The position numbers and the translations under genes are program-made. Positions 3,006 through 49,830 of a stretch of DNA of 64,000 nt are shown one piece after another. Position 1 is the first letter of the stretch; each line of letters begins with the position of its first letter. The notes under the pieces are model-generated. The model worked only from the letters and a program-made list of their open reading frames with translations, did no database searches and was not told the origin of the DNA. The stretch is from Haliotis rufescens (lineage: Eukaryota). Location: contig NW_025964392.1 of the NCBI RefSeq assembly GCF_023055435.1, positions 434,001 through 498,000 on the forward strand. Direction: 5' to 3'.

Positions 3006-3088
3006 TGACAGCAGCAGCTCTCAAGCTCTCACTGCCCAAAGTCAGACGTTTCTCCGCCCCGACACACCAAACAATGCAAGTGGGGCAG
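3006..3088 (+). CDS. RYK: RYK exon, juxtamembrane (DSSSSQALTAQSQTFLRPDTPNNASGA)
   Basis: ttttcttctaacAG acceptor and GTAAGG donor; LRxDTPNNA motif as in RYK. Confidence 0.88.
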
Positions 3089-6000
3089 GTAAGGTCACAT
3101 GACACATCACATGATGTCAACTGACATGGGGTCACGACACTCCCCAACATTGTCGTTTGTCTGGTGTTTGAGTTACCTGCCTTGCCTCAACTCCTCACAG
3201 GGGTGACAAACGAGGAAAAAGGTGTCTCGGAGTTCTGAATCAGGATATGTCACACCAGGAATTTATTTGCACTGTGCTGGATTCAGTTGGTTTGCCGCAG
3301 AACAAACAATTGACGTTTTGATAGTTTAATAGTGGCGGTGTAGGAGAGGTGTCACAGCACAAATGTCGTTTTGAGAATGCCTTTACAAATATCATTTTCC
3401 AACAAAACTAGGGCACAAATGGATTTCGTTTACAAGAACTTATGGAGAAATGATTTTGCCATATGTTTGGTCATGCCCTGAGAGAGGTGGCTCTTCTGTT
3501 TCTGAGACGGTATGGAGTTTCTGTGGGTAGCCAGCTTCATTTAGAGATATTGTTTTTAGCGTCCCAGGGCCGATGGAGTAGCCATTGACCCTGGTTCAAT
3601 TCCCCACATGGGTACGATGTGTGAAGCCCATTGCTGGTGTCCCCGCTGTGATATTGCTGGAATATTGCTAAAAGTGGTGCAAAATCATACTCACTCACTC
3701 ACTCACTCACTCACTTCAGTGTGCCAAGTCAAGTAACTGCTTCAATTTAAGTCCACACAAGTTCTGACCAGAGAAAAGCATTAAGCTGGGAAAGACAGTC
3801 AGGAACCTTGCAGAAACCCTTAAGATTTCATACATGGCAGTTAGATTTTTAAGTCTTTTTTGGTTTTGGTGTTGATTTAATATGATAAGATGGATAGTAA
3901 TGCTGGTGTTTATTCTAATTTGTTTAAACTAATTTGTTTATTCTAATTAATTTTTCTAATTTGTTTATTCTAATTTATTTTGTCAGCCTCTTCACAGAAT
4001 ACTTGCAATATCTGTTGTGACAAACACTGGACTGTCGATGAGTGAGGCTGTCCCACATTCCCTCTATATCCTTCCGGGTACCCAGTACACAGGTTGATAG
4101 GCAGGAACAGTGTAGATGAGAACATACACTTGGGGAGGAACTGTGTTTGTCCCCCTTGAGACTTGATCTGTGGGGTATCACAACTGGCTTCTTTATCCTT
4201 CCGGGTACCCAGTACACAGGTTGATAGGCAGGAACAGTGTAGATGGGAACATACACTTGGGGAGGAACTGTGTCCCCCTTGAGACTTGATCTGTAGGGTA
4301 TCACAACTGGCTTCTTTATCCTTCCGGGTACCCAGTACACAGGTTGATAGGCAGGAACAGTGTAGATGAGAACATACACTTGGGGAGGAACTGTGTTTGT
4401 CCCCCTTGAGACTTGATCTGTGGGGTATCACAACTGGCTTCTTTATCCTTCCGGGTACCCAGTACACAGGTTGATAGGCAGGAACAGTGTAGATGAGGAC
4501 ATACACTTGGGGAGGAACTGTGTCCCCCTTGAGACTTGATCTGTGGGGTATCACAACTGCCCTCTATATCCTTCCGGGTACCCAGTACACAGGTTGATAG
4601 GCAGGAACAGTGTAGATGGGAACATACACTTGGGGAGGAACTGTGTCCCCCTTGAGACTTGATCTGCGGGGTATCACAACTGGCTTCTTTATCCTTCCGG
4701 GTACCCAGTACACAGGTTGATAGGCAGGAACAGTGTAGATGGGAACATACACTTGGGGAGGAACTGTGTCCCCCTTGAGACTTGATCTGTGGGGTATCAC
4801 AACTGCCCTCTATATCCTTCCGGGTACCCAGTACACAGGTTGATAGGCAGGAACAGTGTAGATGGAAACATACACTTGGGGAGGAACTGTGTCCCCCTTG
4901 AGACTTGATCTGCGGGGTATCACAACTGGCTTCTTTATCCTTCCGGGTACCCAGTACACAGGTTGATAGGCAGGAACAGTGTAGATGGGAACATAAACTT
5001 GGGGAGGAACTGTGTTTGTCCCCCTTGAGACTTGATCTGTGGGGTATCACAACTGGCTTCTTTATCCTTCCGGGTACCCAGTACACAGGTTGATAGGCAG
5101 GAACAGTGTAGATGGGAACATACACTTGGGGAGGAACTGTGTCCCCCTTGAGACTTGATCTGTAGGGTATCACAACTGACCTCTATATCCTTCCGGGTAC
5201 CCAGTACACAGGTTGATAGGCAGGAACAGTGTAGATGAGAACATACACTTGGGGAGGAACTGTGTCCCCCTTGAGACTTGATCTGTGGGGTATCACAACT
5301 GACCTCTATATCCTTCCGGGTACCCATTTATTGCTCTTCAGTGGAATGGTCCCTCAGCTCTTTTGATTTCCTCAAACTTTCTGCAAATGGTATAATATTC
5401 AGACAGAATGTTACAGAAATTTTGTTTTAATAACAAATACAAAAGTCACACCTCCTTGGCAGAATCTGTGAGCTCTGAAATAAAATCTCTCTGTTTTTAA
5501 TTGTATTTCAAAACTCCGATGTTTTTCTGTGACATGCGTCTCACATGCAACAATGGTACTCGATAATTCCTGACTTAATTAATCATCAAAGATTCATTTT
5601 TGTCCCACTGCAGACCAAATCTATCACAGCCAAACAGCTTCATGGAACCATAAAAATAATAAGAAGCGTCCCCATGTAACGTACTTGGATGCCAGGGATT
5701 ATTGGGTTACAGCTGTTTGAAAGCCCTATATGTTGAGGTCTTCCAAGTATCATGGGAGATTTACAATTTAATTATTCTGAAAATGTTGTGCAGCGGCCAA
5801 GAAGGAATACATGTTCAGAGATATAAATAAATAATGACGTGGGATTATTTTCAGATTCCAGTTCTAGTCCTATAGACCTTTCATCATGCTTGAGTTCCAC
5901 AGGGCATGGCTCGCACCTACCTTCCCACCCAACACCTCAGCGTCTGTGGGAGAAAATCAACTTTTTAACATTTGAATATAGGTTTCAGTTTTTTTCCAAT

Positions 6001-9000
6001 GATGATATTGTCAGTGAATTTTAGATTAGGAAATGTCGACATTCGTCATGAAAGGGTTATTTCCATCCAGAAACGATAGAAGGCATGTTGAATTTTACAT
6101 GGGGAAATTACAGCGTAATCTATCATTAAATCAATTTTGCTGTTACTTGCAGAAGGGATTGGCTGAAAGTTTGTCGACTGATAGATGAGACTTCTGTGAA
6201 AGTGGAATTATACTTATTGCGCTCACTGGACTTTCATTTGTTGAGAAATGTGGAAATTTGAAATGGAAATGCGTACTCAAGGGAAATATGTTCCTTAATA
6301 TTTTAATGTATTGTCAGGGTCCCTGAAGACCAAAAGTCTTTTCTCTAAATTTTGCATTTTCTCGTCAATCATTTACAAATTTTCTTTCCATGTTCTTGAC
6401 AATTTCTCATATTTTAGTCCCTCTCTGAAGGAACAGCTTTACATGTCAGGAACAATATGACAACTTTACATGTCAGGAACAATGTGACAACTTCACATGT
6501 CAGGAACAATATGACAACTTTACATGTCTGTAACATGACAACTTTACATGTCAGGAACAACATGACACTTTACATGTCAGGAACAATATGACAACTTTAC
6601 TTGTCTGGAACAAGATGACAACTTTACATGTCAGGAACAATATGACAACTTTACTTGTCTGGAACAATATGACAACTTTACATGCCTGGAACAATGTGAC
6701 AACTTTACATGTCAGGAACAATGTGACAGCTTTACATGTCAGGAACAATATGACAACTTTACTTGTCTGGAACAATATGACAACTTTACATGCCTGGAAC
6801 AATGTGACAACTTGACATGTCAGGAACAATGTGACAGCTTTACATGTCAGGAACAATATGACAACTTTACATGTCAGGAACAATATGACAACTTTACATG
6901 TCAGGAACAATATGACAACTTTACATGTCAGGAACAATGTGACAACTCTACATGTCAGGAACAATATGACAACTTTACTTGTCTGGAACAATGTGACAAC
7001 TCTACATGTCAGGAACAATGTGACAACTTTACATGTCAGGAACAATATGACAACTTTACATGTCAGGAACAATATGACAACTTTACATGTCTGGAACAAT
7101 GTGACAACTTTACATGTCTGGAACAATGTGACAACTTTACATGTCAGGAACAATGTGACAACTTTACATGTCAGGAACAATGTGACAACTTTACTTGTCT
7201 GGAACAATATGACAACTTTACTTGTCAGGAACAATGTGACAACTTTACATGTCAGGAACAATGTGACAACTTTACTTGTCTGGAACAATATGACAACTTT
7301 ACTTGTCAGGAACAATGTGACAACTTTACATGTCAGGAACAATATGACAACTTTACATGTCTGGAACATGACAACTTTACTTGTCAGGAACAATATGACA
7401 ACTCTACATGTCAGGAACAATGTGACAACTTTACATGTCAGGAACAATGTGACAACTTTACATGTCTGGAACAATATGACAACTTTACATGTCAGGAACA
7501 ATGTGACAACTTTACATGTCAGGAACAATATGACAACTCTACATGTCAGGAACAATATGACAACTCTACATGTCAGGAACAATGTGACAACTTTACATGT
7601 CAGGAACAATGTGACAACTTTACATGTCAGGAACAATCTGACAACATTTTGTGCCCACAATCATAACATGCTTTCTGTTTCTTTGTGAGTTATGTATTCT
7701 GATTAGTGTGTTAGAACGTTTCAATTGAAGTTAAAGAAATGTATCCGTGTTTTCATACATAGAAAAGACAAAGACATACAAAAGACAAAGTCATATTTTG
7801 ACTTTTTGACGTGTTTTGAAAAGAGATGTGTTTTGTTGGTTGTCTTGAGGAGTTCACAGACACATCAGAAGAGGTTTTCGCAGGGATCTGTATACTGCCT
7901 CAACATACCCTCCTTCTTCACAGACTGTTTGTTTGTTGCAGGTCTGCCCAACTTCAGACGAGGTATATCTCCTGTGACGGAGTTGAAGCCCACAGACATC
8001 AAGTCCATGCTCAGTGAGATTGCTGTCGAGAGGAAGAGGATAGCGTTAGGAGATCTTCTCATGGAAGGTCAGTCAGAAGCGACTATTAAGACAGAAGCTG
8101 TGATGATTTGAATAGGGTGAATCTATTGTCCATGCTACTGTATTATAGCATTAGGGGCAGTGGGGTAGTGTAGTGGTTAAAGCTCGTCATGCTGAAGGCC
8201 AGGGTTTGAATACCAACATGGGCACAACCATATTCACTCACTCACTCACTTGCATTAGATAACCTGGAAGGTCCCCGTGGACTTGAAGGCTGGAAGGTCC
8301 CTGTGGACTTGAAGGCTGGAAGGTCCCTGTGGACTTGAAGGCTGGAAGGTCCTGGTGGGCTTGAAGGCTGGAAGGTCTCCTTGGACTTGAAGGCTGGAAG
8401 GTCCCTGTGGACTTGAAGGCTGGAAGGTCCTGGTGGGCTTGAAGGCTGGAAGGTCTCCTTCGACTTGAAGGCTGGAAGGTCTCCGTGGACTTGAAGGCTG
8501 GAAGGTCTCCATGGACTTGAAGGCTGGAATGTCCCCATGGACTTGAAGGCTGGAAGGTCCCCGTGGACTTGAAGGCTGGAAGGTCCTGGTGGGCTTGAAG
8601 GCTGGAAGGTCTCCGTGGACTTGAAGGCTGGAAGGTCTCCGTGGACTTGAAGGCTGGAAGGTCTCCATGGACTTGAAGGCTGGAAGGTCCCCGTGGACTT
8701 GAAGGCTGGAAGGTCTCCGTGGACTTGAAGGCTGGAAGGTCTCCGTGGACTTGAAGGCTGGAAGGTCCCCGTGGACTTGAAGGCTTGAAGGTCCCCGTGG
8801 ACTTGAAGGCTTGAAGGTCCCCGTGGACTTGAAGGCTGGAAGGTCCTGGTGGACTTGAAGGCTGGAAGGTCCCCGTGGACTTGAAGGCTTGAAGGTCCCC
8901 GTGGACTTGAAGGCTGGAAGGTCCCCGTGGACTTGAAGGCTTGAAGGTCCCCGTGGACTTGAAGACTGGAAGGTCCCCGTGGACTTGAAGGCTGGAAGGT

Positions 9001-33924: not shown

Positions 33925-36900
33925 GGAAACAAAACTTTAACAAGGCTGATTTACTGGCTGTGTTTTGTTCACAACACCCTGATTTCAACGTCAGAAACAT
34001 CAGAGATATTTTGGAAAACTGACTGACATGGTGTGTGGTTTGCCACATATAAGGACAATACCTTTGTTAAAATGTTAAAAATATGCAAATGGGCTACAAG
34101 TCCACCAGCTTTAATTCTTATGACAGACAAGTCATAACCTGAAGCATTCCTTGGTTGCATGCAACTGTGAAAAACCAGTATGTGTCCCGCTTCTTTTCCA
34201 ATTATGGGAAAGTGCTAAGCGTGGAGTTTGTAATTGAAGACATGGATGGAGTTGCCATGTTCACAGGAGTAAGAAACGTGACAATGGAGAAAGACGAGAG
34301 CGCCAAGAAGATTAAGCCATACATAAAATTTGGAGGGAATTCTTATCACGCTTCTTTCCTGATTATGGGAAAGTTCTGAGTGTTGAATATGAACTGAAGA
34401 CGTGGAGGGAGTTCCCATGGTCACTGGAGTGCGAAATGTAACCATGGAAATTGATGAAAACTCAAAAGAAATCATGCCCTACTTTGTCAAATTGGGAGGG
34501 AAGGCAATGAGTGAGTGAGTATGCTCCATAGGGAGTCACTTTGCCTTAAATGTTATCGGAAAGGTCACACAAGGGCACAATAGAATAGAATGAGAGAACT
34601 GCAAATGGCTGAGGAAAGGTTGATGGAATTGTGTTTGAAATGTTATAGGAAAGGTCACACAAGGGCACAATGTGCAGGGGTTTGGAATAGGAATAAAGTC
34701 AGAAATGGCTGAGGAAAGGTTAAAGGAAATGAGGGTGAGGGAGGAAAGGGAGAAAAAAGAAAGGGAACAGAAGGAGATGGAGAGCGTGGAGAGAGAAACT
34801 TTGGACGAGAGTGACGATTCATTAGATATTAATTACAGTGAAAATGCTAAGGGGGAGATGGATTATACGGGTGGTGAAAAGGAGGGGAGGGAGTGTGTGG
34901 CACCAGCAGTCCCAGGAGTTCTTTGCTGACATCAGTCAGACTGATTTTCCAAATCTAGAAAGGGGCAGGTCTCAACAAAAAAAAGGAAAGAAGGGGAGGA
35001 AAAATAGTGGGTCACCGGTGAATGGGAAAAGACCAAGGCAATCCAGTCATGTTTCCCAGAGCGTGTCTGAGGCTGCCCGAGCAGCCATCTTGCCAGCCTC
35101 CCAGTCAAGGTCAAGGGAATCCAGCACGGCACGGCTCAATGACACCTGAGTTGGGTCAATCAACAGAGCCAAACGATAACGAACTATGCTACGCCCCCGG
35201 ACTATGAGACTGAATTGCAAATCAAATTTTGCTACTTATTTATAAGGAGTGCTTTTGTGTATACATTGTTTTACATTAGCTGTATTTCTTTTAAAAAAAC
35301 CAAGCAACAACAACAAACATGTTTAATTTTGTAACAATTAATTGTAATGGGCTTATTGAACAGCAAACTAAAAGTAATATATTGTCTAAAAAATTTAATT
35401 CAGGCATTGATTTTCTATTTCTGCAGGAGACTGACATATATAATTTGAATTTAGCAAAATTTTATGAACTAAATTTCAGGGAAATGGGTTTTGGGCCTTT
35501 GGTACCAATGTCAGTAGAGGAGTTGGTATCATTATTAATTCAAGAATTGATTTTAAGGTAGAGTATTTAATTTCGATAAAGAAGGAAGATATGTTGTAAT
35601 AGATGGAAAGATAAATGAAACAAAAATAAGATTAATAAATATTTATGCACCTAATTTCAAGACATATCTTAATATTTAGTAACTAACAAATTAATGGTTT
35701 TAGGGGCTGATTTTAACTGTATTTGTAATTTGAAATTTGATAAAATAGGAGGTAATTAAAAAAAAGCAATCAACAAGGGGCTAATATTATTGACAAGTGG
35801 GTCTCCGTTGCCTGGCGTAGTTCTACTAGTGGTGGGTCCCGGCTTGACTGGTTCTATCTCTCCTCCAACCTCCTATCTGCTGTCGACTCTATGACAATTA
35901 CCCCATGCTGTTTTTCTGATCACGATTACGTAGTGGTAAGTCTTAGAGATTTTGAAGGCATAAATTTTGGGCCATCATATTGGAAGTGTAATAACTCTAT
36001 TTTGGATATAGCTTTTAAAAAATTATTTGCGTCATTTTGTACCAGTAACGTCCCTGCTTTAAAAGAAATAACTCTAGACTGGTGGGACGATTTTAAAATT
36101 AAAATTCAGAATTTTATTAAACTTATACTCAAAATGCGTAATGAATCTCGGTCAGCCCACCGCAAAAAAATAGAATTCCAATATAAAAATTTATGTCATG
36201 CTGAAATCTTGCCGTCCTGGGTTGTATATTGATCAAACTGTAGAAATCAAAAAACAAATTTAAGATTTGGAATTGAACAAATGTATCCGATCTCAGGATA
36301 AGGAGTTAGAATTAGGAGAAAAACCTTCTAGTTATTTTTTCCGTAAGGAAGTAAAGAGAGGACAATTAAAATCAATTAATGCAATTTCGGACTCTTCTTG
36401 AAAAATAGTCAAAACCTCTCAAGATATCATTGTGGTTTTCGTTAAATACTATTCAGAACTTTTGGCAGCCGATCCCATTGATGAAGAAATTAGCAATTTC
36501 TTGATGATTTACCTGTTTCGGACTCACAAGAAGGTGACATTACAAAAGACGAAATTTTAGGCGCCCTTAAGGCAATGGGGACTGATAAGTGACCAGGTCC
36601 AGACGGTCTTACCAAGAAGTTTTATGTGTTTACTTTTGATGTTGTCGGTGCTGTCTTACTTCGTCTTGTCAATCTGTTTTTCGGAAGGCTCTTTGCCTAA
36701 TTCGTCAAACAAATCTTATATTACTCTTCTATGTAAGGATGTCAAAAATGCCACTAATGTACGTAATTGGCACCCAATATCTTTACTAAACGTCGATGTA
36801 AAAATGATTTCCAAATTATTATGCACTCGTTTGGGCAATGTCATAGGTGAAGTGGTCCATCAAGATCAGACTTGTGCTGTTCCCGGAAGGTCTATTCATG

Positions 36901-37335
36901 ATAATTGCCATTTACATCGTAATGTGCTTGATTACGTGGAGGAAAAAAATCTCCCGTGTGCCCTAATTAGTTTAGACCAAGAGAAAGCCTTTGATCGAGT
37001 TTCTCACCAGTTTTTGTTTAAACTTTTACACACTTTTGGCTTCGGTCCAAATTTAAAAAAATGGGTCAAAATTTTATATACGGACATATCCAGCTCAGTC
37101 ATAGTTAATCAGCACATTTCTCTTCCTCTTCCAGAGGGAAACTTTTCGATTTTGGCAGTCCACTGCTGAGCTTATTAGGCGCTCCGTTTTATACAAATCT
37201 GTTTTGAAGGGTGGCCTTGGTGAGATACATATCAAGTCGAAATGACAGTCTTTTCAGTTAAAACATATACAAAAACTTGTTAATGGTTGCTCAGAAACGT
37301 GGACGTTTTTAGCAAAATATTGGTTAGGATTATCC
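33925..37335 (+). mobile_element. Degenerate Tx1-clade LINE (element D)
   Basis: ORF1 remnants (FFSNYGKVLSV...TGVR, CLKCYRKGHTRAQC); ORF2 remnants MFNFVTINCNGL, LQET, FSDH, DQEKAFDRVSH, KGGLG. Confidence 0.85.
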
Positions 37336-38240
37336 TTTCCCCGTGGGGACCTGGGGAAGATGAACAAGAATGTGTCCTCAGCACCCAATTGCTGTCGTAA
37401 AAGGCGACCGATTTGGGCAGCCTGTTTGCTGTGGGCTGCGACCCTGTGTCGGCAGAGGAAGGGATTCTTGTGGTTGAGGGCGACGGAGCCGGCAATAGTG
37501 CTCCTTAGTCCAACACACCACTTCGACCCTAACTTTGCCTAGACGGGTGGTAGGGTGGGCCCGGTCCTATCAATCGGCTGGTCATGTCATGCCCTGTGCA
37601 TACACTTTATTTGCACAAACATTTGGTATTAATGAAATATATTATATTCTAAATGTTTCTACTGTATCTATCAATGTATAAAACCTGCTTAGAGCCCTAT
37701 GCCCAGAAGGCGGTGGCTCATGGGCCAATCTGGTGATGCTTAGCTCCGAATTCTGTACGTCTCCAATTGATGGTCATGGGCAGAACCAGCCTGTCCTGTA
37801 ATTTGGTAGATAGTTCCAGCTTTTCGTGTCTAATTTGCTGGAGTATACCACCCCTTTATCCCCGGTCTTTGCACCCGGGGGATCCGCTGCAGCATAATTT
37901 ACTGTACTTGTTGACACTCCATGGTGGGTGGGGAAAAGGGGTACCGAATCTTTTTCCTTTTGACATGGCTTCCCAACACCCTAGTTCAAAACGAAGATAC
38001 AAAGAATCTGACAATTCACCTGAAGAAAATACCCCCAACTGATCTGACCATGTTTTTCGAAGCTTGTGACAAAGAACCCATCAAACTGAATCCGTTTGCA
38101 ATCTCAAAAGGTATCGCTGGTATCTGAAGAGAGGTTACACATGTCACCAAGCTTTGATCCGGTTCTCTCCTTGTGGAATGTGCACAGAGACAGCAATCCA
38201 TCAACCTTCTGAAATTGAAAGAGTTTGTTATTATCAAATC
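37336..38240 (+). mobile_element. Nimb-like LINE 5' UTR and ORF1 start, degenerate, lacking the ribozyme
   Basis: Colinear with the reverse complement of ~32900-33770; KLNPFAISKGIAG. Confidence 0.82.
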
Positions 38241-39088
38241 ATTGATGTGTGCAGAGACACAATGACCCTCCCAGATAAAATGATAATCCGTACGGGAGTA
38301 CGCACTGTTCCTATCAGTCTAAATAAAGGGTTATTGATGAGGTGCCACACATTGTAAGGCTAGGGGATGGCATGACCATGCTGCTGCCCCTATGTGCTTG
38401 CGCTGTGGGTTCAAAGGTCACATGAGGAATTCATGCATGGCACACCCAAGTGAATTCTTTAATAAAATACTTCAGTAATACGGGATGCAAAACAAAGCAG
38501 GTGTTGACAAGAGGTCAGAACAGGAGAATAGGGAGGAGTGATTGAATGTGTGAGTTGGGTTTAACGCCGCTTTTAACAGTATTACAGTTATATCGCGGTG
38601 TGTCAGCTTAATGTGGGAGGAAAGCCCGAAGTGATGCAGGTCTAAGACGTTTACCACTTCGGTGAAACCCACGAGCACGGGTATGGTGCTGACAAACCTA
38701 GAAACGTAATCGGTGTGAACCGGGATTCGAACCCACAATCATAGGTTTCTGGCGTGCCCAAGGAACGCAACTCTGCACAGCGAATCGCGGCGCCGTAGAC
38801 GACTGGGCCACACGTTCCCCAGAGAAGAGGGATGACATGTGGCATGATGACAATGAGCCAACAGTGAATGAGGAGGTGATGAATGAGGATGAGGGGGACA
38901 AAGAAAATAAGGTTACTAATGTAAGCGTTCCTGGGGATGTATTTAATCCTGTTCCTAGCACTTCAAGTTTACCTGATTCTCCGGATATTAACAAAGTGGT
39001 TTCAGGGATGAGTAAGGAAGATTCCCAAAATGTGCTTGTAATCCATACTATTGTGGACACCAGCGATGACTCCAGTATCAGAACCATC
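38240..39088 (+). mobile_element. Degenerate Tx1-clade ORF1 fragment (element E), interrupted by a SINE
   Basis: TGVR, DEVPHIVRLGDGMTMLL and the PMCLRCGFKGHMRNSC knuckle align with ORF1 at 48458-49330; acidic tail. Confidence 0.7.
38537..38820 (-). mobile_element. SINE family 1
   Basis: Reverse-complement match to 323-610. Confidence 0.88.
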
Positions 39089-39130
39089 ATCGCTTCTTGG
39101 CCTTTTGGCTAAGATCAAAGTGTAGTATCT
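39089..39130 (+). ncRNA. U2: U2 snRNA 5' fragment (first ~42 nt), non-functional
   Basis: ATCGCTTCTTGGCCTTTTGGCTAAGATCAAAGTGTAGTATCT matches the conserved U2 5' end, including the branch-point recognition sequence GTAGTA. Confidence 0.95.
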
Positions 39131-39768
39131 TGACCGAATTCTCAGGGGATGACGGTGGACTTTTGTGTTGACTCTTGGATTCGTGGATTTGCGGAGGTGA
39201 TTTTATTGTGTGCTCACTTTTTGCAGGTCTTCCAGCTGGTACTGTCACTTTTTAAGTCAGATTAGATTTGACGACAAAACCCCACTGGGACAGGGCTGGC
39301 AGTGATGCGGAGAGTGTGGCGAGTGAGAAGAAACATTTGGAGATTGAAAAAGAGTACCAGAGACAGGAGGGGAGAGAGAACGACATGAGAGAGAGAAAGA
39401 GGTTACCCTCGGGGTAAGGGGATGTCCGGTTACCCTCGGGGTAAGGGGACGTCACGGAAAAGTAGGGGCCTGGTCCAGGGACTCTGGAGATAGGAAGAAA
39501 CGGCGTTCATATTCCTCGCAGACAGTGTCCCCGGAGTCGGAAAGGTGTCCACCAGTGTGAGAGGTGTTGCCCCCATTGATCCCGGCATTGATCACCATCA
39601 CTCTTTTTATGTATAATTTCGTTTCATCACAACCAGGATATGAGCTTTTCCTGGAAGGTGACTATTTATTGTGTGTTTTTCCCCCTCAGGTCTACGGGTG
39701 GGTACAGGTACCTTGAGTACCCGAGGACCTCTAGTGGTCACCCGGCCCTCACATTTCCAGTATGGCAG

Positions 39769-40063
39769 GGGGGCACGGGTGGCCCAGTCGTCTAAGGCGC
39801 CGCGATTCGCTGTGCAGAGTTGCGCCCCTTTGGTACGCTAGAAACCTATGATTGTGGTGGGTTCGAATCCCGGTTCGCCCAAATTATGTTTCTAGGTTTT
39901 TCAGCACCATACCCGTGCTCGTGGGTTTCACCGAAGTGGTAAGACCTGCATCACATCGGGCTTTCCTCTCACATTAAGCTGACACGCCGTGATATAACTG
40001 GAATACTGTTGAAAGCGGCGTTAAACCCAACTCACTCACTCACTCACTCACTCACTCACTCAC
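39769..40063 (+). mobile_element. SINE family 1 inserted at the ORF1 start codon of element A
   Basis: TSD GTATGGCAG (39760-39768 / 40064-40072); long (CACT)n tail. Confidence 0.92.
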
Positions 40064-40789
40064 GTATGGCAGAGACAGCAGCTACTTCAACTGGCGCTGT
40101 CCCAGAAGAATTTTTTGACAATGAGGTCATTGAGAAGACATTGAAGATCACAACACGGTTGAGAGGACTGACTAAAGACCAAGTGTTTTAGGTTCTTTTA
40201 ACCCCAATCAGCTAAAGACAGCATCTGGAAGTAAAAAAATGGGAATGAATACTTTGTAACCTTCAAAGAAAGGAAATATCCGCATTTGTTTTGCAGTGAA
40301 AAGAGTGTGAGGTGTAATGGTGAACTGTATTCTTTCTCGCCTTATGACAGGCAGATAGTAGAACTAAAAATACATTGGCTGCATGGCACCATTGCCGACC
40401 AGTACCTCGTTCATTTCTTTTCCAAATATGGAAAGGTGCTGGGAGTCAGAAGACACCACGAATTCCTAGAAACGGAAAAAATTGAAACAGGTGTTCGATA
40501 TGTTGATCTTCAACTCCACAGTTATGATATGGAAGTCCCCTACATCGTTAAAACGTGGAACAGAACGCTTATTTCAACGGCTGGCAGGCTCTCAATCTGC
40601 TTCAGCTGCAATCGTATTGGACATTTGAGGAGTAGCTGTCCTGATAGGCAACCACAATCTAGGTTTGTAGACCTGGCACCATCTTATGCGAATGCCACTA
40701 GAAACACTTGCAACATCATGATAAGCCATCAATTTCAAGCATTAGTTATGGTGAAGGGCATTTCATTGGTTCCCTTTAGAAAGATGCAT

Positions 40790-40826
<37 letters not shown>

Positions 40827-40834
40827 CGATGATG
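40790..40834. repeat. (GAT)n microsatellite in the acidic region of Tx1 ORF1
   Basis: Seen directly in the sequence. Confidence 0.9.
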
Positions 40835-41096
40835 AAATTGGGTCAGGAGTTGAAAGGAAGGGTGAAGATGATGTGGAAGGGGGAACGGAGGAGGGTGACG
40901 TAGAAAAGGTGGTGTCTCCTGACAAAGAGGTGTCCCGTGACATTGGTGGGTGCAGACGTTCAGTTTTCATAGGATGGTGATGATGCTCTTGCAGGCATGA
41001 GTGAATCCGAGTTACCTCCCCATAACCTTTTAGTAGAGCACTACGCAAAGCCAGAGGTAAATCAAAGGGTAAGGACTCTTCATTGGGGAGCGAGAG

Positions 41097-44000
41097 TGAG
41101 TGAGTGAGTGAGTTAAAGCTTTACATCACATCGGCAATATTTCAGCCATATCGTGACGAGAACATTTATAATACTGACATAGAATAAAACACCTGTCATC
41201 GACGGACAGTAGAACAACTAGCATATCACAGTTTATAAATAAAACTAGTCTAGAACAATTAAAAGAATAACCTATTATTCAACAATACATTATAAAAAAC
41301 GGGCTAGAGATCGCCAGCAACCAAAGTTAGGCCACCTAACTGGGGCCTGTGGGGACTTACAATACTTCTGCTACCTGCATGGCTCCCCAGCAGGATTTAC
41401 ACCATCCCTTCAGCAGCTGGCGATGGTACGCAATTAAGCCATAATTAAAACAAAACAAATATACTACGTTTAAAAACAGTGGTATGAATAAACGTACTTT
41501 CAGGACGTGGTCTTACATATCCTCTCAGGGGGACAATAATTTTACACTACTTCAACCCCCTTTGAGGATACAGCCACTAACCATCTATGTTACTCATTAA
41601 ACACTACCAATATTATAAAAATCAACTATGTACACAATCAAAATTTATCAATAAGTTCTATTTCTTTTAAAAATCCAACAATTAAATGACAACTGATACT
41701 ATTAAAAAGATCCTTTAGAGATGAAGATTTGAAATAGTTATCCCTTGTGATCGCAAAATCAACACAGTCAAGCAGGACATGCTGGACTGTGATTCTTTCA
41801 TCACAAGGGATGCAAAACGGTGGATCCTCACCTTTCAATAGATACTCATGTGTATATCTTGAATGGCCAATACGACATCGTCGGACAATGACCTCTTCAA
41901 ACCTGGACTGACAACCCAAGTAGGTATAACCGATATTTGGTTTTATTGCATGTAATTTATTTATACCCACTTGGGTGTCCCACTTCTTCTGCATTAGATT
42001 TCTGATGTAAGAACGGATAACAGGTTTATAGTCACTGTAGGGAAGAAGAAGTGGTGTCACAGATTTGTTGAGTGCTGCTTTAGCTGCAGCATCAGCCATT
42101 GTGTTGCCTTTTATGCCCACATGACTGGGCAACCAACAAAAGACGATGTCGTATTGGCCAGTTGAAAGATCATTATAAAGTTCTAAAATGTTTAAAATAA
42201 TTGGATGTTTAGAGGAGACTTTTTTCAGTGCCTGAAGGCAAGACAAAGAATCCGAAAAGATGATAAATTGTTTATATGCAGACTGTCGTTGAATGTATTT
42301 TAAGGCTGTAAGAAGAGCATTGGCCTCAGCAGTGAAAATAGAGCTAGTGTCTGGTATTCTAGATGAGATATGTTTTGATCCAACAACAGTGGCACATGCC
42401 ACCTTGCCACCATCCTTGGATCCATCAGTAAAGATTGAACGGTGGGTGTCATATTTATTTCTTAGTTCTACATATTCCTGTTGATATATAAGTTGATTGG
42501 TGTCAGATTTAATAAAACGGGTTAGAGAAACATCTACTTCTGGCCTCACCAGCTGCCAGGGAGGAGAAGACAAGAGACGATATGGTGAGATAATATCAAG
42601 ATCTATATTTGCAGCAATAATATGTGATTTCATCCGAATTCCAAGTGGTGGAATCAGCTTTGTTTTTTTCTGAAACAGCTCTTCATATAGGGGTTGAAAA
42701 ACGGAGTCATAAGCAGGATTAGAGTGTAATTTAGTGATATATTGAAGAGACAATTTAACACGGCGTTGTTTCAAAGGGAGTTCATCAGCCTCGACATAGA
42801 GGCTGTCAACAGGAGAAGTTCTAAAAGCACCAAGACACAGTCTGAGTCCTTGGTGGTGGATTGAATCTAGCTTTTTTAAATTGCTCTCGCAAGCTCCAGC
42901 ATATACAATGGAGCCATAATCTAATTTAGAACGAATCAATGATCTATAAAGGTGAAGGAGGGTTGTCTGATCCCCTCCCCACTTAGAATGCGAGACGACT
43001 TTTAACAGATCTAGGGCCTTCAGGCATTTAGTCTTTAAATATTTGATATGTGGCAAAAACGTCAAATGGTGGTCGAAAATTAATCCCAAAAATTTGGCTT
43101 CTTTAACAACCTTAATTGGAGTGCCATCTAAAGAGAGTTCTGGATCGTTATGGAGTTTATATTTCCGACAGAAATGAATACAATTTGTTTTGGTCTGTGA
43201 AAACTTAAATCCATTCTCAAGACACCATTTAGTAATTTTATTAAGACACAACTGTAACTGTCTTTCAATGGTATGCATATTTTGACCACGACATGAAATA
43301 TTAAAATCATCCACAAACAATGACCCATCTATTGAGTCATTTAATACTTTAGATAAACTATTTATTTTGATGCTAAACAAAGTGACAGACAAAATACTGC
43401 CCTGTGGAACCCCCTGATCCTGATTATAATGATCAGACAGGGTTGATCCAAAACGAACTTGAAATTGTCTGTCAGTTAAAAACTGTGATACAAATTGAGG
43501 CAAGCGGCCTCTTAAACCAAAGTCATGTAAATCTTTTAAAATACCATGCTTCCAAGTGGTATCATAAGCTTTTTCAAGATCGAAAAAGATAGATACAGCA
43601 TGCTGTTTATTTACAAAAGCACTTTTAACAAATGATTCTAAACGAACCAAATGGTCAATTGTACTTCGGTTTTTACGGAAACCACATTGGATGTTACTAA
43701 TCAGATTATTGGTTTCTAAAAACCAAACTAATCGATTATTTACCATGTGTTCCATGGTTTTACAAACACAGCTAGTTAATGAAATAGGTCGATAATTTGA
43801 TGGATCGGTATGATCCCTGCCAGGTTTTGGTATGGGTACAACTATCGCATTTCTCCATGAAGGAGGAAAATGTCCAGTTGTCCATATATGATCAAAAATA
43901 TTCAGTAGCGTTGTAAGACAAGAATCAGGCAAGTGTTTTAAGAGCTGATAATGAATATCATCAGCACCAGTCGCAGTATCATGAGCTTGTGCTAAAGCAG

Positions 44001-44615
44001 TGTGTAGTTCATTTAGTGAAAAAACTTCATTATAATCTTCGCCGTTGTCAGAATTAAAATTAACGTTTTTCTTCTCTTGTTGTTGTTGATACTTCTGAAA
44101 CTTTGGATTATAATTTGACGAAGAAGAATGTTTAGCTAAAGTTTCGCCCAATTTATTAGCAATATCTGATTTTTCCGTCAATAAATTATTGTCATCTTTA
44201 AGATGACGAATGCAAGATTTAGAACCCTTGCCTTTGATTCTTTGGATCATGTTCCATACCTTTGACATAGGCGTGCGTGAATTTATTTTAGAAACATATT
44301 TCTTCCAAGACTGACGTTTATTGTGTTTAAATGTTCGTCGAGCCTTGGCAGAGTTAATTTTCACAGTGTTTAAATTATGTACAGTAGGATGGCGTCGAAA
44401 GTATTTCTCTGCCTTCTTCCTACGCTTCCTAGCTTGTTTGCATTCGTCATTAAACCATGGTTTCCGAATATGTGAGTTCATAGAGGACTTAGGAATAGAT
44501 TCATCAGCTATGTTCTTCAGTATGTCAGAGAATGATTGAATTGGATCAGTGACATCCATGAAAAGGTTTGGTTTCAATTTGTCAATACACATAGTCTGAA
44601 ATAATGGCCAATTAG
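41097..44615 (-). mobile_element. 5'-truncated Nimb-like LINE (second family) with an open RT-RNase H frame (41638-~44615)
   Basis: TSD GGGGAGCGAGAG (41085-41096 / 44616-44627); FVDD, FTDGSK; long 3' UTR and (CACT)n tail. Confidence 0.94.
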
Positions 44616-45049
44616 GGGGAGCGAGAGAGGGCAAGAGGTCGAGTCCCCTTTTCGTAGACACCCATTTTCTCAATCGGGACTAGGGCAAGCCACAGTTATT
44701 TCTGAAAGACACAGAATTTCTCCCAGGGGTGCCCTTAATAAGTTGAGGCCCGAATTACTTAATTCAAAGGTGCCGTCAACCCACCCCAAAATGACGACGC
44801 TATGCCCCCGACTATGAGCAAAGATCAATGGATTCAAACACTCCCTCTTAGGGAGTATTATTTGTGTTTTTTGTTGTTTAAAATGTGTTTTATCTCAATT
44901 GTTTTCTATTACTTTTAGTCACAAACAAACCTCAAATGTTTAATTTTACTTCTATAAATTGTAATGGTTTACTAGATTCTGCAGCCAAAATCAATAATTT
45001 ATCATATAAATTGAAATGCTGGTATTGACTTTCTCTTCCTTCAAGAAAC

Positions 45050-45395
45050 GACCGCCTCCGTGGTCTAGTGGTAGAGCGTCCGCCCGGAGAGCGGTTCGAT
45101 CCCCGGACGCGTCATACTAAAAGACGTTAAAAGATGGTACTTGTTGTTACCCTGTCTGGCGCTCCGCATGAAGGGGCTAAAGCAAGGACTGGTCGGCTAG
45201 GAGTCAGTATACTGTGTCTGAGTGGGGTATTCATGTTAAACTGTGGCATGGTATCTCAGTGGGCTAGTACTATAAATCGGCATCAGTCCGGACTAGTACA
45301 AGCAACCACACACACACACACACGTGCATACACGTCGCTTTATAAGTGCAATAATCTTGGACGCGACGTTAAACCCAATTTCACCTCACCTCACC
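45050..45395 (+). mobile_element. tRNA-derived SINE family 3 (V-domain-like) with (TCACC)n tail
   Basis: A/B boxes, AAAGACGTTAAAAGATGGTACTTG body, (CA)n; TSD TCCTTCAAGAAAC; inserted in the LQET motif of element A ORF2. Confidence 0.85.
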
Positions 45396-46570
45396 TCCTT
45401 CAAGAAACCCATGAAATTTGTAAAGACTTCCTTGTTGATAGACCTAAATTACATTCGGAACGTTCGCCTTTACGAGAAGGTGAAATCACAAAAGTGGAAA
45501 TTCTCAATGCCCTTAAGGCCATGTGTGATAATAAGTCTCCAGGTTCGGACGGGCTTACCGAGGCGTTTTATTTGTATTCTTTTGATGTTCTTGGTGATGT
45601 TCTCTTTGTCTAGGTGCACTTGAAACCACAGACCATCGTTGTGTTTCTTGTCCTTGTGTTATTGTACTGTGGAATATCATTTTTCCTTGGTTACACCAAC
45701 TTTATGAAGTTTGGTCTCAAAAGTGTTATTCTGCAGTAAAGTTGTTTGAGTCTATTGTTACAGACCCTTCAGGTTATCTATCGAAATTTAGTTCTAAACA
45801 ATTTTATAACGCACTTCTTCAAACAGTTGTTGAAAATAAAGTGGAGAGACTATATCCACAATTGAATTTTGGACTTGTTTTGCCTAACCTTCAACACTCC
45901 GTGTGTTAATGTACTGTGGGATACCTTTTTTCCATGGTTGCATCAACTTTCTTCAGGGCTAATAAAAAAATCACATGAAATTATAAAGTTTGGTCTCGCA
46001 CCAAACATCCCAAATTCATATAAAATTTGCTGTTTGTGTATATTTGGTGTCTTTGGCAAAATACAGTATTTGGTAGATTCGGAACATTAATAAATATGAA
46101 CACAAACAGTTAAAAGGGAATGATATTGTGTTGCGTTTTTTGTCACTTCTAAAAGTACGTATTCGGGTCGACTTCTTTCGTCTATCCAGTTCTACATTTG
46201 CCAACTACTGGCTTTCCTCTTCAATTTTCTGTAAAGTCAATGCGGGTGTTTTAACCTTCTTGTTCTAATAACACTGTATTATTATCAATTATTGATTTAT
46301 CAATTATTGTATTATCATGTTACCATTAATAATTATTAAAATAATTAAAGCATATTATGTCCATGTTTAGTTTATGACCCAATGATTGACCCACATTATT
46401 ATAATTTTAGTTCTCAGTTTAGGCATATACATTACATAATATACAAATTCTCTGTTCATCCAAATTAGACCCCCATCTGATGACCCCATTTGCCCTATAT
46501 TTAAATGCTTGTATATATGAATATGTAATGTTGTGTATATATATGTTAACATATAATAGTTTTATTTTAG

Positions 46571-46613
<43 letters not shown>

Positions 46614-46904
46614 TATTAATATAAAGTGTACATAAAATCAACATTATTGTACATTTTTACCAGTATATATATATGTCCCCTACTTTGTCTCCCCATTCCC
46701 ACTTTATTAAATTTGTGTATATATATAATTGTGGTTCTACGTTTTACGTTTGTGACATTTCCTCTTTACTTTGAATTGTTATGGCCACTACTCCGACCAC
46801 TGTGAGACTTTATTTTATTTAGGAGTAGTGGCCCTACTGCTGTCCAAATGTGTAGTTTCTTTTCCATGTGAATAAATTTATTACAAAAAAAAGAGTATCT
46901 GTTC

Positions 46905-48005
46905 CTGGAGCTACATTGGAGGACAACTCTGGATTGATCTTGTGTTTCTGTTCCCTGGATTCTTGGAGGAAGTGGTAACTATATTGTGTGACTGACTAAC
47001 TTTCTTCTCTTTACAGATCGACGGGTGGGCCTACCACAGTTGTAAAACTGTGGTAGTAGACCTTCAGTGGTCACCCCCCATTTATTCCTGTCTTTTCGCC
47101 GCCATGGCACTCGCTGTGGACCAGTGCGACAGGGACCCAGGCATCGCCCCACGTACCATATCAGAGCGCAATCAAAGGTGAGAGGATTCTCAAGAGAGGC
47201 CTTATTTTATGCCATTCAGAAAGCTTATCGCTGGCATTTCCGTTAAAAACATTTTTTCAATCTGGAATACTGAACAGAACGGAACATGGTTTATAACGTT
47301 TCATGATCAAAGGAGAGTCAAAGCTTTGTTAGATGCAGGATCAGTTCCTTTTATAGATGGTTTCATTCAATTCAGCCATTACACAAAAAAGGTAACATTG
47401 TTACGAGTTCATTGGCTACATGAAGACGTCAGAGACAGTTTCGTTGCAAAACATTTCAGCAGGTATTTTTGTCACGTTGTCATTAATATCTATTATAATA
47501 ATTAAAGCATCATATGTCCTTTTTTAGTGTACCGACCCAATGATTGACCCCAATTGCCCCACATTATTATCTATTAATTCACAGTTTTGATATAGTACGT
47601 AAAACAATCTTTGTACATCAAAATTAGGCCCCCTCTGATGACCCCATTTGCCCTGTATTTAAATGCTTGTATATATGGATATGTAATGTTGTATATATAT
47701 ATATATATTGACATATAATGGTTATTTTAGAATTGTATATATATCAAGATAAAGTGTAAATAAAATCAACATTTGTACATGATTACAAGTATGTCCCTAA
47801 CTTTGTCTCCCCATCCCCACTTTATTTAACTAGTATTTACGTTTTACTTGTTTGTGACGTTTCCTCTTCATTTTGAACTGACATGGCCACTACTCCGACC
47901 ACTGTGATACTTTATTTTATTTAGGAGTAGTGGTCTTATTGCTGTCCAAATCTGTATTATATTTTCCATTTTCATGTGAATAAATTTATTATATATATAC
48001 AAAAA
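46905..48005 (+). mobile_element. Keno-like element B, ~1.1 kb internally deleted copy
   Basis: 5' leader, then ORF1 5' part (RVHWLHEDV) joined to a 3' UTR similar to element A; bounded by AGTATCTGTTC and AGTATC. Confidence 0.82.
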
Positions 48006-48010
48006 GTATC

Positions 48011-49830
48011 GACTTCAAGAAAGCAGTTGGATTACAGTGGATATACATGTGTATGTGCTTTTTCTTGGACCCAGGGTGACGAGTCATTGTGTGATTTTAC
48101 TCTTTTCCCTTCAGGTATACGAGTGGGTGCAGGTACCTTGTGTACCTGAAGACCTTCAGTGGTCGCCCCTCACCTTCCGAGCATGGCAGAGGCAGGAGCG
48201 ATGTGTACTGGCGCTGTACCGCAGCACTTCTTTGACAAGGAGGCTATCCACAACACCCTGAGGATCTCTTCCCGTATGCGAGGACTAACGAATGAACAAG
48301 TGTTTCAGGTACTTTTGACATCCATTGAAACGGTTACTGCCAAAGATATTAGTTCAATCTGGAAATCTAAAAATGGGAATGACTATTTCGTCACCTTCAA
48401 GGAACATAAATATGTTCATCTGTTCAGCTGTATGAATAGTGTAAACTTTTATGGGCAGTGGTATACTTTCTCCCCCCCTATGACAGTCAAATCATTGAAC
48501 TTAAAATCCATTGGTTGCATGGCACCATTGGTAACCAGTACTTGGTGCACTTCTTCTCAAAATATGGGAAAGTGTTAGGAGTGCGTAGGCACAAAGAATT
48601 CCTAGACAATGAACCAATTGAAACTGGTATTCGATACGTTGATCTACAACTCCAAAGCTATGACACTGACCTCCCATACATTGTCAAGATGGGTAAGCGC
48701 ATGTCAATGCTCATTTCTACTTCTGGCAGATTGCCAATATGTTTCAACTGCAATCGTATTGGACACTTGCGGAGTGCCTGTCCTGACAGACAGCCACCTT
48801 CCAGGTTCACAGTCGTGTCAGACACATATGCAAAAGCTGCAAACATTGGGTTGCGAGACCAGGACGCAGCATCCATTACAAGCATGAGTGAGGTAGAGGG
48901 CGTGGCGCCTTTTATTGGCCCGCTTCCTAAAGAAGCATTTGATGACAATGAAATGGAGGTCAAAGGTGAAGGGAAGGGTGAAGGTGTTTTCGAAGGGAGA
49001 GGAGAGAATCCTTCTGTGGAAAAGGAGGTTTCAACAAACAATGAGGTACCCTGTGACATTGGAGATGGAGAGGTTCAATTCTCACAAGATGGCGATGATG
49101 CTATAAGTGTAATTAGTGATCATGATTTTTCTCCCCCTTACCCTTTACCACAGTCCAAAGGAAATCCAGAGGCAAGTCTAACGGTAAAGACACTTCAAGG
49201 GGTAGTAAAAGAGGCTCCGAGGTGGAATCCCCTTCTAGGAGGCACCCCTTTTCCCAGTGTGGTCCAGGACAAGCTGCAGTTATTTCAGAAAGTCAGAGAA
49301 CGTCTCCCAGGGGTGCACTTAAAAAGTTGAGAGCTGGTGAAGAGGCCCCAATGACCTAATTTAAAGGTGCCTTTCAAATTACTCCCAAAATGACGACGCT
49401 ACGCCCCAGACTATGAATATAGAACAACAGAATCAAACACTCTCCCTGGCAGTAATAATCAAGGATCGTGTACATTTTATTTTAGATCAATTTAGGTTTG
49501 ATGTAGATGTGAGGTATTTATTATTAGATTGTAGTATAAATGAGACTAGGATTCGATTAATATTTATGCTCCTAACAATTCGGTAGATAGGGTGATATTT
49601 TTCCAAAATATTTCAAAACATTTTGTGACTAATGGACTTTTAATTATGGGAGGGGATTTTAATTGTGTTTGTGATATCCAACTTGATAAAGTAAGTGGGA
49701 ACGTGAGAGGTAATCAACAAGGCGCGGTTCTTATTGGACAATGGGTTTCTGACAATTCTCTTACTGACATATTTCGTTCTTTATTTCCAGACTTGGTGAT
49801 GGTGTCTCGGCGTAATGCTGCTTTGACAAG
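48011..49830 (+). mobile_element. Keno-like element C: 5' leader, frameshifted ORF1 (48183-49330) and endonuclease remnant
   Basis: ORF1 with CFNCNRIGHLRSAC knuckle; NIYAPN and MGGDFNC endonuclease motifs. Confidence 0.87.

What the first reader, a model, noticed from the sequence alone, without database searches (positions are those of the whole stretch)
38240..39130. The U2 head is promoterless and sits inside another Tx1 ORF1: a possible self-seeded landing pad
Seen: the fragment starts exactly at U2 nucleotide +1. The upstream DNA is not an snRNA promoter region but the zinc-knuckle/acidic part of a Tx1-like ORF1 (element E), and the rest of U2 is absent from the window. Inference: the 42 nt arrived as RNA, either as the 5' end of a U2-promoter-driven U2-Keno chimeric transcript or as a truncated U2 retrocopy. 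It created an ectopic target that then recruited more insertions. An element that carries its own target site could spread without destroying further U2 genes.
Basis: partly seen in the sequence, partly recalled or inferred. Interest (0 to 1): 0.8.

Follow-up and report, generated by a model that had tools for sequence, protein, structure and literature searches.

The report
Promoterless U2 head on Keno-like LINE
A 42-base start of the U2 spliceosomal RNA gene, with no promoter, sits between two copies of a jumping gene that normally lands only in U2 genes; it almost certainly arrived as RNA, which is a neat but not unprecedented by-product of how such elements are transcribed.

Summary
Window 39089-39130 is U2 nt 1-42 (41/42 identical to this genome's U2). 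It starts at U2 +1 and ends at the canonical insertion site of a U2-specific Keno-like LINE. The DNA upstream is not a U2 promoter. It is the zinc-knuckle and acidic tail of another Keno-like ORF1 (E, 38238-39088), split by a later SINE.

Genome-wide I found 16 exact U2-head/element junctions. Fourteen keep the U2 promoter. Two lack it: this one and one on contig C35. The C35 copy is a single retrocopy flanked by an 11-bp target duplication: extra G, then U2 nt 1-42 plus Keno, then a 5'-truncated Nimb LINE. It shows that a U2::Keno RNA starting at U2 +1 exists and gets reverse-transcribed. RNA origin of the window head is therefore well supported (about 0.7).

How the head came to abut E is unresolved, about even between insertion into a resident E copy and template switching.

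The "self-seeded landing pad" idea is not shown:
- Two more Keno-like elements (D, E) lie upstream of the head.
- The array's right end is missing.
- The locus lies in the 1.09-Mb contig that holds nearly all Keno copies.

The scan's note s1-805573 covers the same array on this window. This is a new member of known kinds, of moderate interest.

The parts
34000..37336 (+). Element D: Keno-like LINE fragment. ORF1 remnant ~34077-34673, ORF2 APE/RT remnant ~35319-37336. Its 5' part is cut by a young Nimb LINE ending at 33826, and its 3' part is missing.
   Evidence: tblastx to elements A, C and E. RVT_1 in 36624-37169. 86% identical relative at C614:694-696 kb.
37337..38237 (+). First ~900 nt of a Nimb-like LINE, starting at the family's exact 5' end. 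The rest of the element is absent. Junctions J1 (37336/37337) and J2 (38237/38238).
   Evidence: Eleven genomic copies checked, most sharing the same 5' end with unrelated upstream flanks. All continue past the equivalent of 38237, whereas the window does not.
38238..38535 (+). Element E, part 1: middle of a Keno-like ORF1 with the CCHC zinc knuckle (38397-38438). Decayed, with stops and frameshifts.
   Evidence: 77% aa identity, 6e-20, to L079 ORF1.
38536..38820 (-). tRNA-derived SINE inserted into E after E was in place.
   Evidence: 88-90% identical to SINE copies at 323-610 and 39769-40049.
38821..39088 (+). Element E, part 2: acidic Ser/Asp-rich ORF1 tail. The frame is open up to the junction. 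Homology to relatives runs to the last base (J3 = 39088/39089). This stretch is unique in the genome at DNA level.
   Evidence: 59% aa identity, 2e-23.
39089..39130 (+). U2 snRNA nt 1-42 (the promoterless 'head'), with one C->T change at nt 10.
39131..46892 (+). Element A: Keno-like LINE starting at the canonical junction. It carries a SINE (39769-40049) and a nested minus-strand Nimb LINE (~41091-44613). ORF2 is largely deleted. Its 3' UTR ends in poly(A) at 46885-46892.
   Evidence: 5' end aligns with the 5' ends of array copies..
46893..46900 (+). Linker: one G plus the 7-nt U2 nt 36-42 motif. Its length and sequence match the target duplication of canonical insertions.
46901..48004 (+). 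Element B: internally deleted Keno-like copy (5' UTR, start of ORF1, 3' UTR).
48005..48010 (+). Second linker: 6 nt of the U2 nt 36-41 motif.
48011..49830 (+). Element C: Keno-like 5' UTR, ORF1 (48458-49330) and start of ORF2 (APE). It breaks off at ~49830, so the right end of the array is missing.

Best explanation
The 42 nt are an RNA-derived copy of the U2 5' end.

In this genome a Keno-like (APE + RT) LINE inserts after U2 nt 42 and duplicates nt 36-42. An inserted copy is then transcribed from the U2 gene's own external promoter. Its RNA therefore starts at U2 +1 and runs U2(1-42) followed by the element.

At the window locus such an RNA was reverse-transcribed to its first base. It became fixed, without a promoter, next to the ORF1 tail of an older Keno-like copy (E), inside an old cluster of five co-oriented Keno-like elements (D, E, A, B, C).

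Shown:
- the anatomy
- the canonical junction
- absence of a promoter
- existence of a U2::Keno RNA with its 5' end at +1 (from the C35 retrocopy)

Inferred: that this particular head arrived that way.

Two routes to the E junction remain about equally likely. (a) Endonuclease-mediated insertion into a resident E copy at a target-like motif. (b) A jump of the reverse transcriptase from the 5' end of the U2::Keno RNA onto an E RNA, and further onto a Nimb RNA, within one retrotransposition event.

The head-to-tail elements to its right are joined by the 7-nt duplicated core. That is expected from repeated use of a regenerated target. Whether the head was that target is open.
For: - Head = U2 nt 1-42, starting at +1.
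- Canonical insertion in real genes: U2 1-42 | element | poly(A) | U2 36-192.
- 16 exact junctions genome-wide: 14 with the array promoter, 2 without.
- C35 composite. TSD of 11 bp at L081rc 2033-2043 and 8317-8327. Between them: one extra G, U2 1-42, 1157 nt of a Keno copy 99.5% identical to an array copy, then a 5'-truncated Nimb with its own (ACTC)n tail. This is one retrotransposition event that copied a U2::Keno RNA to its +1 end. The extra G is the kind left by a copied cap (cap reading from general L1 knowledge).
- No spacer or promoter DNA in the window.
- E is homologous to Keno-like ORF1 up to the last base before the head.
- For route (a): the 4-nt target core lies 2, 2 and 9 nt left of J1, J2 and J3. 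Random expectation is 0.011, 0.011 and 0.039.
- For route (b): three co-linear left-hand fragments have no right-hand halves in the window or in the next ~77 kb. Keno copies are otherwise almost confined to U2 loci. The C35 copy proves Nimb/Keno template switching occurs.
Against: - No RNA data.
- The E|U2 junction is unique to this locus, so a DNA-level breakpoint cannot be formally excluded.
- No target duplication can be checked here because the right end of the array is missing.
- There is no extra G at this junction.
- A U2 snRNA retrocopy later hit by Keno would look the same from the left side.
- The target-core statistic was noticed after the fact.
Confidence: 0.68

Rival explanations
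1. A U2(1-42)::Keno retrocopy inserted into a resident E copy. Its 42-nt head then acted as an ectopic half-target that recruited the later elements (A and B in front of C). The element thus seeds its own landing pads away from functional U2 genes.
For: - The RNA origin is supported as above.
- E carries a 6-of-7 match to the target core 9 nt left of the junction, and J2 has the core 2 nt left. Core-like sites therefore seem able to be hit, and a perfect 42-nt left half would be a better target.
- The A|B and B|C linkers equal the 7-nt duplication expected if each newcomer entered between the head and the previous element.
- Five Keno-like elements cluster here without any U2 spacer.
Against: - D and E lie left of the head and cannot be explained by it.
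- The same linkers arise from re-use of the right-hand half-target in a real U2 gene, and L079 shows such a linker elsewhere.
- The right end of the array and the right half of E are missing.
- The only other promoterless head (C35) has recruited nothing, though it is young.
- The order of arrival of A, B and C cannot be determined.
Confidence: 0.25
2. A U2 snRNA itself was retrocopied here (full length or 3'-truncated, hence starting at +1 and promoterless). It was later hit by Keno-like elements at nt 42/43. Its 3' part was lost with the right end of the array.
For: - It would give the same left side.
- snRNA retrocopies and snRNA-headed SINEs mobilised with Tx1-type LINEs are documented (PMC4494074).
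- The array's right end is missing, so U2 nt 36-192 could once have been there.
Against: - Dispersed intact U2 copies are few in this genome. The pattern hits outside the arrays number about seven, and the two I examined (L001, L002) are U2 variants with TATA-like motifs upstream.
- A U2::Keno RNA is directly evidenced.
- This model needs one more event: the retrocopy, then the targeting.
Confidence: 0.13
3. The head is what is left of a real U2 gene of an old array. A DNA-level deletion or rearrangement (or an assembly error) joined E to it and happened to end at +1.
For: - The locus lies in contig C614, which holds U2 arrays and U2 spacer remnants at 580 kb and 700 kb on the same strand.
- All three junctions J1-J3 are unique to this locus.
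- A deletion is needed anyway to explain the truncated element C.
Against: - A breakpoint landing on +1 exactly has a chance of roughly 1 in 1,000 per 1,169-bp unit.
- No spacer remnant survives in 64 kb although the head is 98% intact.
- RNA ends give +1 for free, and the C35 copy shows the mechanism at work.
Confidence: 0.09

Closest known systems
Keno, the U2 snRNA gene-specific LINE of the Tx1 clade (Kojima & Fujiwara 2004, as cited in PMC4494074, PMC4640811, PMC6136364)
   Same: APE + RT ORF2. ORF1 with a CCHC knuckle. Insertion at one fixed site in the first ~40 nt of U2, in the same orientation as the gene, which destroys the gene.
   Different: The host is a mollusc; the papers list frogs, fish, lancelet and hydra. 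The junction here is after nt 42 with a 7-bp duplication of nt 36-42. The papers give the site as 37 nt into U2, with the 3' flank starting a few nt later than here. Clade placement by RT phylogeny was not done.
5' transduction / upstream-promoter-driven retrocopies (L1 5' transduction; SVA with a MAST2 exon, cited in PMC4494074)
   Same: Host sequence between an upstream promoter's start site and the element is carried at the 5' end of new copies. The carried piece starts at the transcription start.
   Different: Here the promoter is the target gene's own snRNA-type promoter. The carried piece is the left half of the element's own target site.
Template-switch chimeric retrocopies (U6-L1 and snRNA-Alu/L1 chimeras, Buzdin 2002, Garcia-Perez 2007; R2 end-to-end template jumping, Bibillo & Eickbush 2004; all as cited in PMC4494074)
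   Same: Co-linear pieces of different RNAs joined on one strand, with the whole flanked by one target duplication. This is shown here for the C35 composite.
   Different: The partners are two LINE RNAs (Nimb and U2::Keno), not a free snRNA. For the window locus the flanking duplication cannot be checked.
SINEU, SINEs with U1/U2-derived heads mobilised with Tx1-type LINEs in crocodilians (PMC4494074)
   Same: snRNA 5' sequence at the head of a retroposed unit linked to Tx1-type machinery. Promoterless snRNA heads.
   Different: SINEU heads are longer snRNA pieces ascribed to template switching onto free snRNA. Here the head stops exactly at the LINE's insertion site, which points to read-through from an occupied U2 gene. 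No SINE family is formed.
Tandem insertions of U2-targeting Utopia, and its insertions at U2-like sites (PMC4640811)
   Same: Occasional tandem insertion in U2 genes. Off-target copies flanked by short U2-target-like sequences.
   Different: Utopia has a restriction-like endonuclease and is unrelated to Keno. No carried U2 head is described in the passages I read.

Membership tests
Keno / Tx1-clade U2-specific LINE (elements A-E and the array copies) | ORF2 with an apurinic-type endonuclease followed by reverse transcriptase | tested here: met
   An intact 1170-aa ORF2 of a young array copy has Exo_endo_phos (2e-12), RVT_1 (9e-34) and zf-RVT (4e-8). The window's D fragment has RVT_1.
Keno / Tx1-clade U2-specific LINE (elements A-E and the array copies) | Site- and orientation-specific insertion into U2 snRNA genes | tested here: met
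   14 promoter-bearing U2 genes are occupied at exactly nt 42/43 with the 7-bp duplication. Nearly all ORF2 copies lie in U2-bearing contig C614.
Keno / Tx1-clade U2-specific LINE (elements A-E and the array copies) | Same nucleotide position in U2 as published Keno | tested here: inconclusive
   The papers give '37 nt downstream' with a 3' flank starting a few nt later than here (PMC6136364, PMC4640811). Here the 3' flank starts at nt 36 and the 5' flank ends at nt 42. This U2 has one extra A near nt 30, so numbering differs slightly.
Keno / Tx1-clade U2-specific LINE (elements A-E and the array copies) | RT phylogeny places it in the Tx1 clade with Keno | not tested
   No reference RT set was available without typing sequence from memory. 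The large protein search was not spent on this.
Read-through (5'-transduced) retrocopy | Carried host sequence starts at the host promoter's transcription start and ends at the element's genuine 5' junction; no promoter upstream | tested here: met
Read-through (5'-transduced) retrocopy | Target-site duplication flanking head plus element | tested here: inconclusive
   Window: the right end is missing. C35 copy: met, 11 bp.
Template-switch chimeric retrocopy | Same-strand pieces of different RNAs joined abruptly, with the whole flanked by one duplication | tested here: inconclusive
   Window: three co-linear pieces with unique junctions and no right halves, but the flanking duplication is not checkable. 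C35: met.
Functional U2 snRNA gene | Full-length ~192-nt coding region with upstream snRNA promoter | tested here: not met
   Only nt 1-42 are present. The upstream DNA is ORF1-derived, and there is no match to any of three U2 upstream regions.

The most novel reading that the evidence does not exclude
Keno-like LINEs are transcribed from the U2 promoter, so every full-length RNA carries the left half of its own target. Copies that land off target, at core-like motifs that occur in Keno ORF1 and RT sequence itself, then create high-quality half-targets. Later copies pile up at these sites. The family can thereby build and live in U2-gene-free arrays ('safe harbours') instead of destroying more U2 genes.
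Probability: 0.2. Interest if true: 0.7.

Novelty: new member of a known kind. Interest (0 to 1): 0.4.

Why it matters
U2-targeting LINEs live in a small, essential gene family. How they are transcribed, and how they persist without exhausting their targets, is an open point raised in PMC4640811.

The two promoterless heads, and above all the TSD-flanked C35 composite, give sequence-level evidence for two things. The element's RNA starts at U2 +1, so the element borrows the snRNA promoter. And that RNA takes part in template switching with an unrelated LINE.

If the carried half-target can be re-used, it would offer a simple route to target-independent arrays. As it stands, the window locus is an old, decayed example whose history cannot be fully reconstructed.

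Tried and rejected
1. Promoter test. BLAST of three U2 locus types (tandem-array unit with its 977-bp spacer, and two variant genes) against the window found nothing beside the head, even at E<=10. The real-gene remnant reading was therefore put low.

2. Search for the right-hand halves of the Nimb-like element, D, E and C.
- None is in the window.
- No Keno-like ORF2 lies between C614:471.3 and 574 kb.
- The genome search for the Nimb-like remainder was swamped by 1,552 candidates and is uninformative.

- One slip to disclose: a local script classified already-stored loci with a short suffix that overlaps that stretch by 7 nt.
- One search took the 4-nt core by window coordinate instead.

4. 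Looked for tandem (linker-type) junctions among the young array loci already fetched. None were found, but those loci had been chosen for having heads, so this is uninformative.

5. I first thought the C35 Keno part ended at the ORF1 stop. Translation showed the last 14 codons are Nimb ORF1, and the true break is 41 nt earlier.

I could not fetch the region right of the window or more junction loci.

7. Tx1-clade placement by phylogeny was not attempted.

Full report
**What is there**

Rfam reports a single U2 hit in the window, starting at 39089. By sequence only 39089-39130 is U2. It is nt 1-42, 41/42 identical to the U2 genes of this genome, with one C-to-T change at nt 10.

Real U2 genes here form 1,169-bp tandem arrays on contigs C181, C603 and C614, the window's own contig. 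There are also a few variant genes.

The head starts at the first base of the gene. The next base, 39131, is the 5' end of a LINE (element A). A's first bases align with the 5' ends of elements that sit after nt 42 in promoter-bearing U2 genes.

In a real array unit the arrangement is U2 1-42 | element | poly(A) | U2 36-192. The element therefore makes a 7-bp duplication of nt 36-42.

A young array copy encodes an intact 1170-aa ORF2 with apurinic-type endonuclease, RVT_1 and zf-RVT domains. Its ORF1 has a single CCHC knuckle. This is the make-up and behaviour described for Keno, the U2-specific Tx1-clade LINE (PMC4494074, PMC4640811, PMC6136364). I did not place it by phylogeny.

**Upstream of the head**

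No part of the array spacer/promoter or of two other U2 upstream regions is found in the window, even at E<=10.

Window 38238-39088 is the decayed C-terminal half of a Keno-like ORF1 (element E):
- a perfect CX2CX4HX4C knuckle at 38397-38438
- an acidic Ser/Asp tail
- 77% (6e-20) and 59% (2e-23) protein identity to the ORF1 of a Keno-like element at C614:716-717 kb

A SINE (38536-38820, minus strand) was inserted later. Homology to relatives runs to the last base before the head. In relatives the sequence continues into the ORF1-ORF2 spacer and ORF2. Relatives' ORF1s run on for tens of codons, so the break is inside or at the very end of ORF1.

**The wider anatomy changes the picture**

To the left of E lie two more fragments on the same strand:
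- The first ~900 nt of a Nimb-like LINE, starting at that family's exact 5' end (37337-38237).
- Before it, another Keno-like element, D (34000-37336), with ORF1 and APE/RT remnants.

This gives three unique junctions in 1.75 kb:

| Junction | Position | Left side | Right side |
|---|---|---|---|
| J1 | 37336/37337 | D, in the RT region | Nimb-like LINE, exact 5' end |
| J2 | 38237/38238 | Nimb-like LINE, ~nt 900 | E, mid-ORF1 |
| J3 | 39088/39089 | E, ORF1 tail | U2 +1 |

To the right, A ends in poly(A) at 46892. It is followed by G plus the 7-nt U2 36-42 motif, then by an internally deleted element B. After B come 6 nt of the same motif and then element C, which breaks off at ~49830 in its endonuclease region.

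None of the right-hand halves (rest of the Nimb-like element, D, E or C) is in the window. No Keno-like ORF2 lies between C614:471.3 and 574 kb.

Nearly every Keno-like ORF2 in the 1.33-Gb genome lies in contig C614. They are on the plus strand from 469 to 718 kb and on the minus strand from 743 to 1064 kb. U2 spacer remnants lie at 580 and 700 kb, and a live array at 925-1084 kb. So the window cluster is the outermost member of the genome's one Keno/U2 domain.

An exact search for the last 18 nt of the head followed by an element-type start gives 16 junctions. Fourteen have the array promoter directly upstream; the one at 700 kb has a diverged version of it. Two are promoterless: the window and C35:6,980,4xx.

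**The C35 copy**

The C35 copy is decisive for mechanism. Its target site was duplicated over 11 bp (L081rc 2033-2043 and 8317-8327). Between the duplicates lie, in order:
- one extra G
- U2 nt 1-42
- 1,157 nt of a Keno copy, 99.5% identical to an array copy
- without a break, a 5'-truncated Nimb LINE running to its own (ACTC)n tail

This is shown.

It is one retrotransposition event by Nimb machinery. The reverse transcriptase switched from Nimb RNA onto a U2::Keno RNA and copied it to its 5' end. That end is U2 +1. From general L1 knowledge, the extra G is the kind of base left by a copied cap. So a U2-promoter-driven chimeric RNA exists and is reverse-transcribed.

**Reading of the window head**

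An RNA end explains the exact +1 boundary for free. A DNA breakpoint would hit it about once in a thousand. I put RNA origin from a U2::Keno read-through transcript at about 0.7. A U2 snRNA retrocopy later hit by Keno gets about 0.13. A DNA-level truncation or assembly error gets about 0.09.

How the head came to touch E is unresolved.

- The 4-nt core of the target lies 2, 2 and 9 nt left of J1, J2 and J3.
- Random positions in the window show this with probability 0.011, 0.011 and 0.039.
- This was noticed after the fact, but it is striking. PMC4640811 reports similar U2-like sites for off-target Utopia.

For a single chimeric cDNA (A's RNA copied to +1, then a jump onto E RNA, then onto Nimb RNA up to its exact 5' end):
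- Three co-linear left halves have no right halves.
- Keno is otherwise strictly confined to U2 loci, so two nested off-target hits within 1 kb are surprising.
- The C35 copy is a precedent.

Under this second reading the head arrived with A, after B and C. It seeded nothing.

**The landing-pad idea**

The 7-nt linkers are what repeated insertion into a regenerated target gives. The same linkers arise whether newcomers use the left half-target (head plus element 5' end) or the right half-target (poly(A) plus U2 36-192). A like linker occurs at C614:716 kb. D and E lie left of the head, where the head cannot have attracted them. The array's right end is lost. The young C35 head has recruited nothing. 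I give the seeding idea about 0.2-0.25.

**Limits**

- No RNA evidence could be obtained. The run search returned only guessed-RNA contig runs and small-RNA raw runs.
- A local script used a short suffix overlapping it by 7 nt on stored loci, which I disclose. One search took the core by coordinate.

**Comparison with the known, and verdict**

The locus combines known things:
- a Keno-type U2-specific LINE, in a mollusc, a host not listed in the papers read
- promoter-proximal 5' transduction
- template-switch chimeras
- tandem re-insertion

The new points are modest. One is sequence-level evidence that the element's RNA starts at U2 +1. The other is two promoterless heads out of 16 junctions. 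This is a new member of known kinds, with interest about 0.4. The scan's note s1-805573 describes the same array on this window. Note s1-805540 (a ribozyme at Nimb 5' ends) fits the exact 5' end seen at J1, but I did not test it.

Noticed in passing
L081 (G000:C35:6974000-6982500), minus strand; rc coordinates 2033-8327: A 6.3-kb composite retrocopy flanked by an 11-bp target duplication: extra G, U2 nt 1-42, 1,157 nt of a young Keno copy, then a 5'-truncated Nimb LINE with an (ACTC)n tail. It is a clean template-switch chimera between two LINE RNAs. An older SINE with its own 9-bp duplication lies just upstream.
   Followed up: yes
Contig G000:C614 (1.09 Mb; the window is 434-498 kb of it): Almost all Keno-like ORF2 copies of the genome lie in this one contig. 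They are on the plus strand from 469 to 718 kb and on the minus strand from 743 to 1064 kb, with live U2 arrays at 925-1084 kb. This looks like one large, partly inverted U2/Keno domain.
   Followed up: partly
Window junctions 37336/7, 38237/8, 39088/9: The 4-nt core of the Keno target lies 2, 2 and 9 nt left of three successive unique junctions (random expectation 0.011, 0.011, 0.039). At J1 the inserted piece starts with a Nimb-like 5' end, which a Keno-type cut does not obviously explain.
   Followed up: partly
L080 (C614:957000-966000), rc 1520-3343 and a twin 3 kb away: A 1.8-kb Keno derivative with an intact 470-aa ORF1 ending in poly-Asp, no ORF2 and a normal 3' end. It sits in at least two neighbouring U2 units. 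It looks like an ORF1-only non-autonomous form, comparable to half-L1 elements.
   Followed up: no
5' UTRs of young Keno copies (L032-L042, first ~50 nt after the U2 head), compared by eye with U2 nt ~58-90 printed: The first ~45 nt of the young elements look like a diverged copy of the U2 stretch that follows the insertion site, including a stem-loop-IIa-like hairpin. Head plus element start may therefore mimic a longer U2 5' region. This may also explain why Rfam extended the window hit to 39233.
   Followed up: no
Window 39060-39088 and L081rc ~3230-3243: In both promoterless loci the retained Keno piece ends in the Ser/Asp-rich ORF1 tail, within roughly 10 codons of each other on a loose alignment. 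With two cases in low-complexity sequence, this may be chance.
   Followed up: partly
L086:657-4169 (C614:1033856-1037368, minus strand): An intact 1170-aa Keno-like ORF2. One search gives the same score and query span at three array positions (about 1035-1037, 1045-1047 and 1062-1064 kb), so the family may still be active.
   Followed up: partly
Window 41091-44613 (minus strand) inside element A: A nested Nimb LINE with a 1011-aa open ORF2. About 7 bp of element A sequence appears to be duplicated at its two ends.
   Followed up: no
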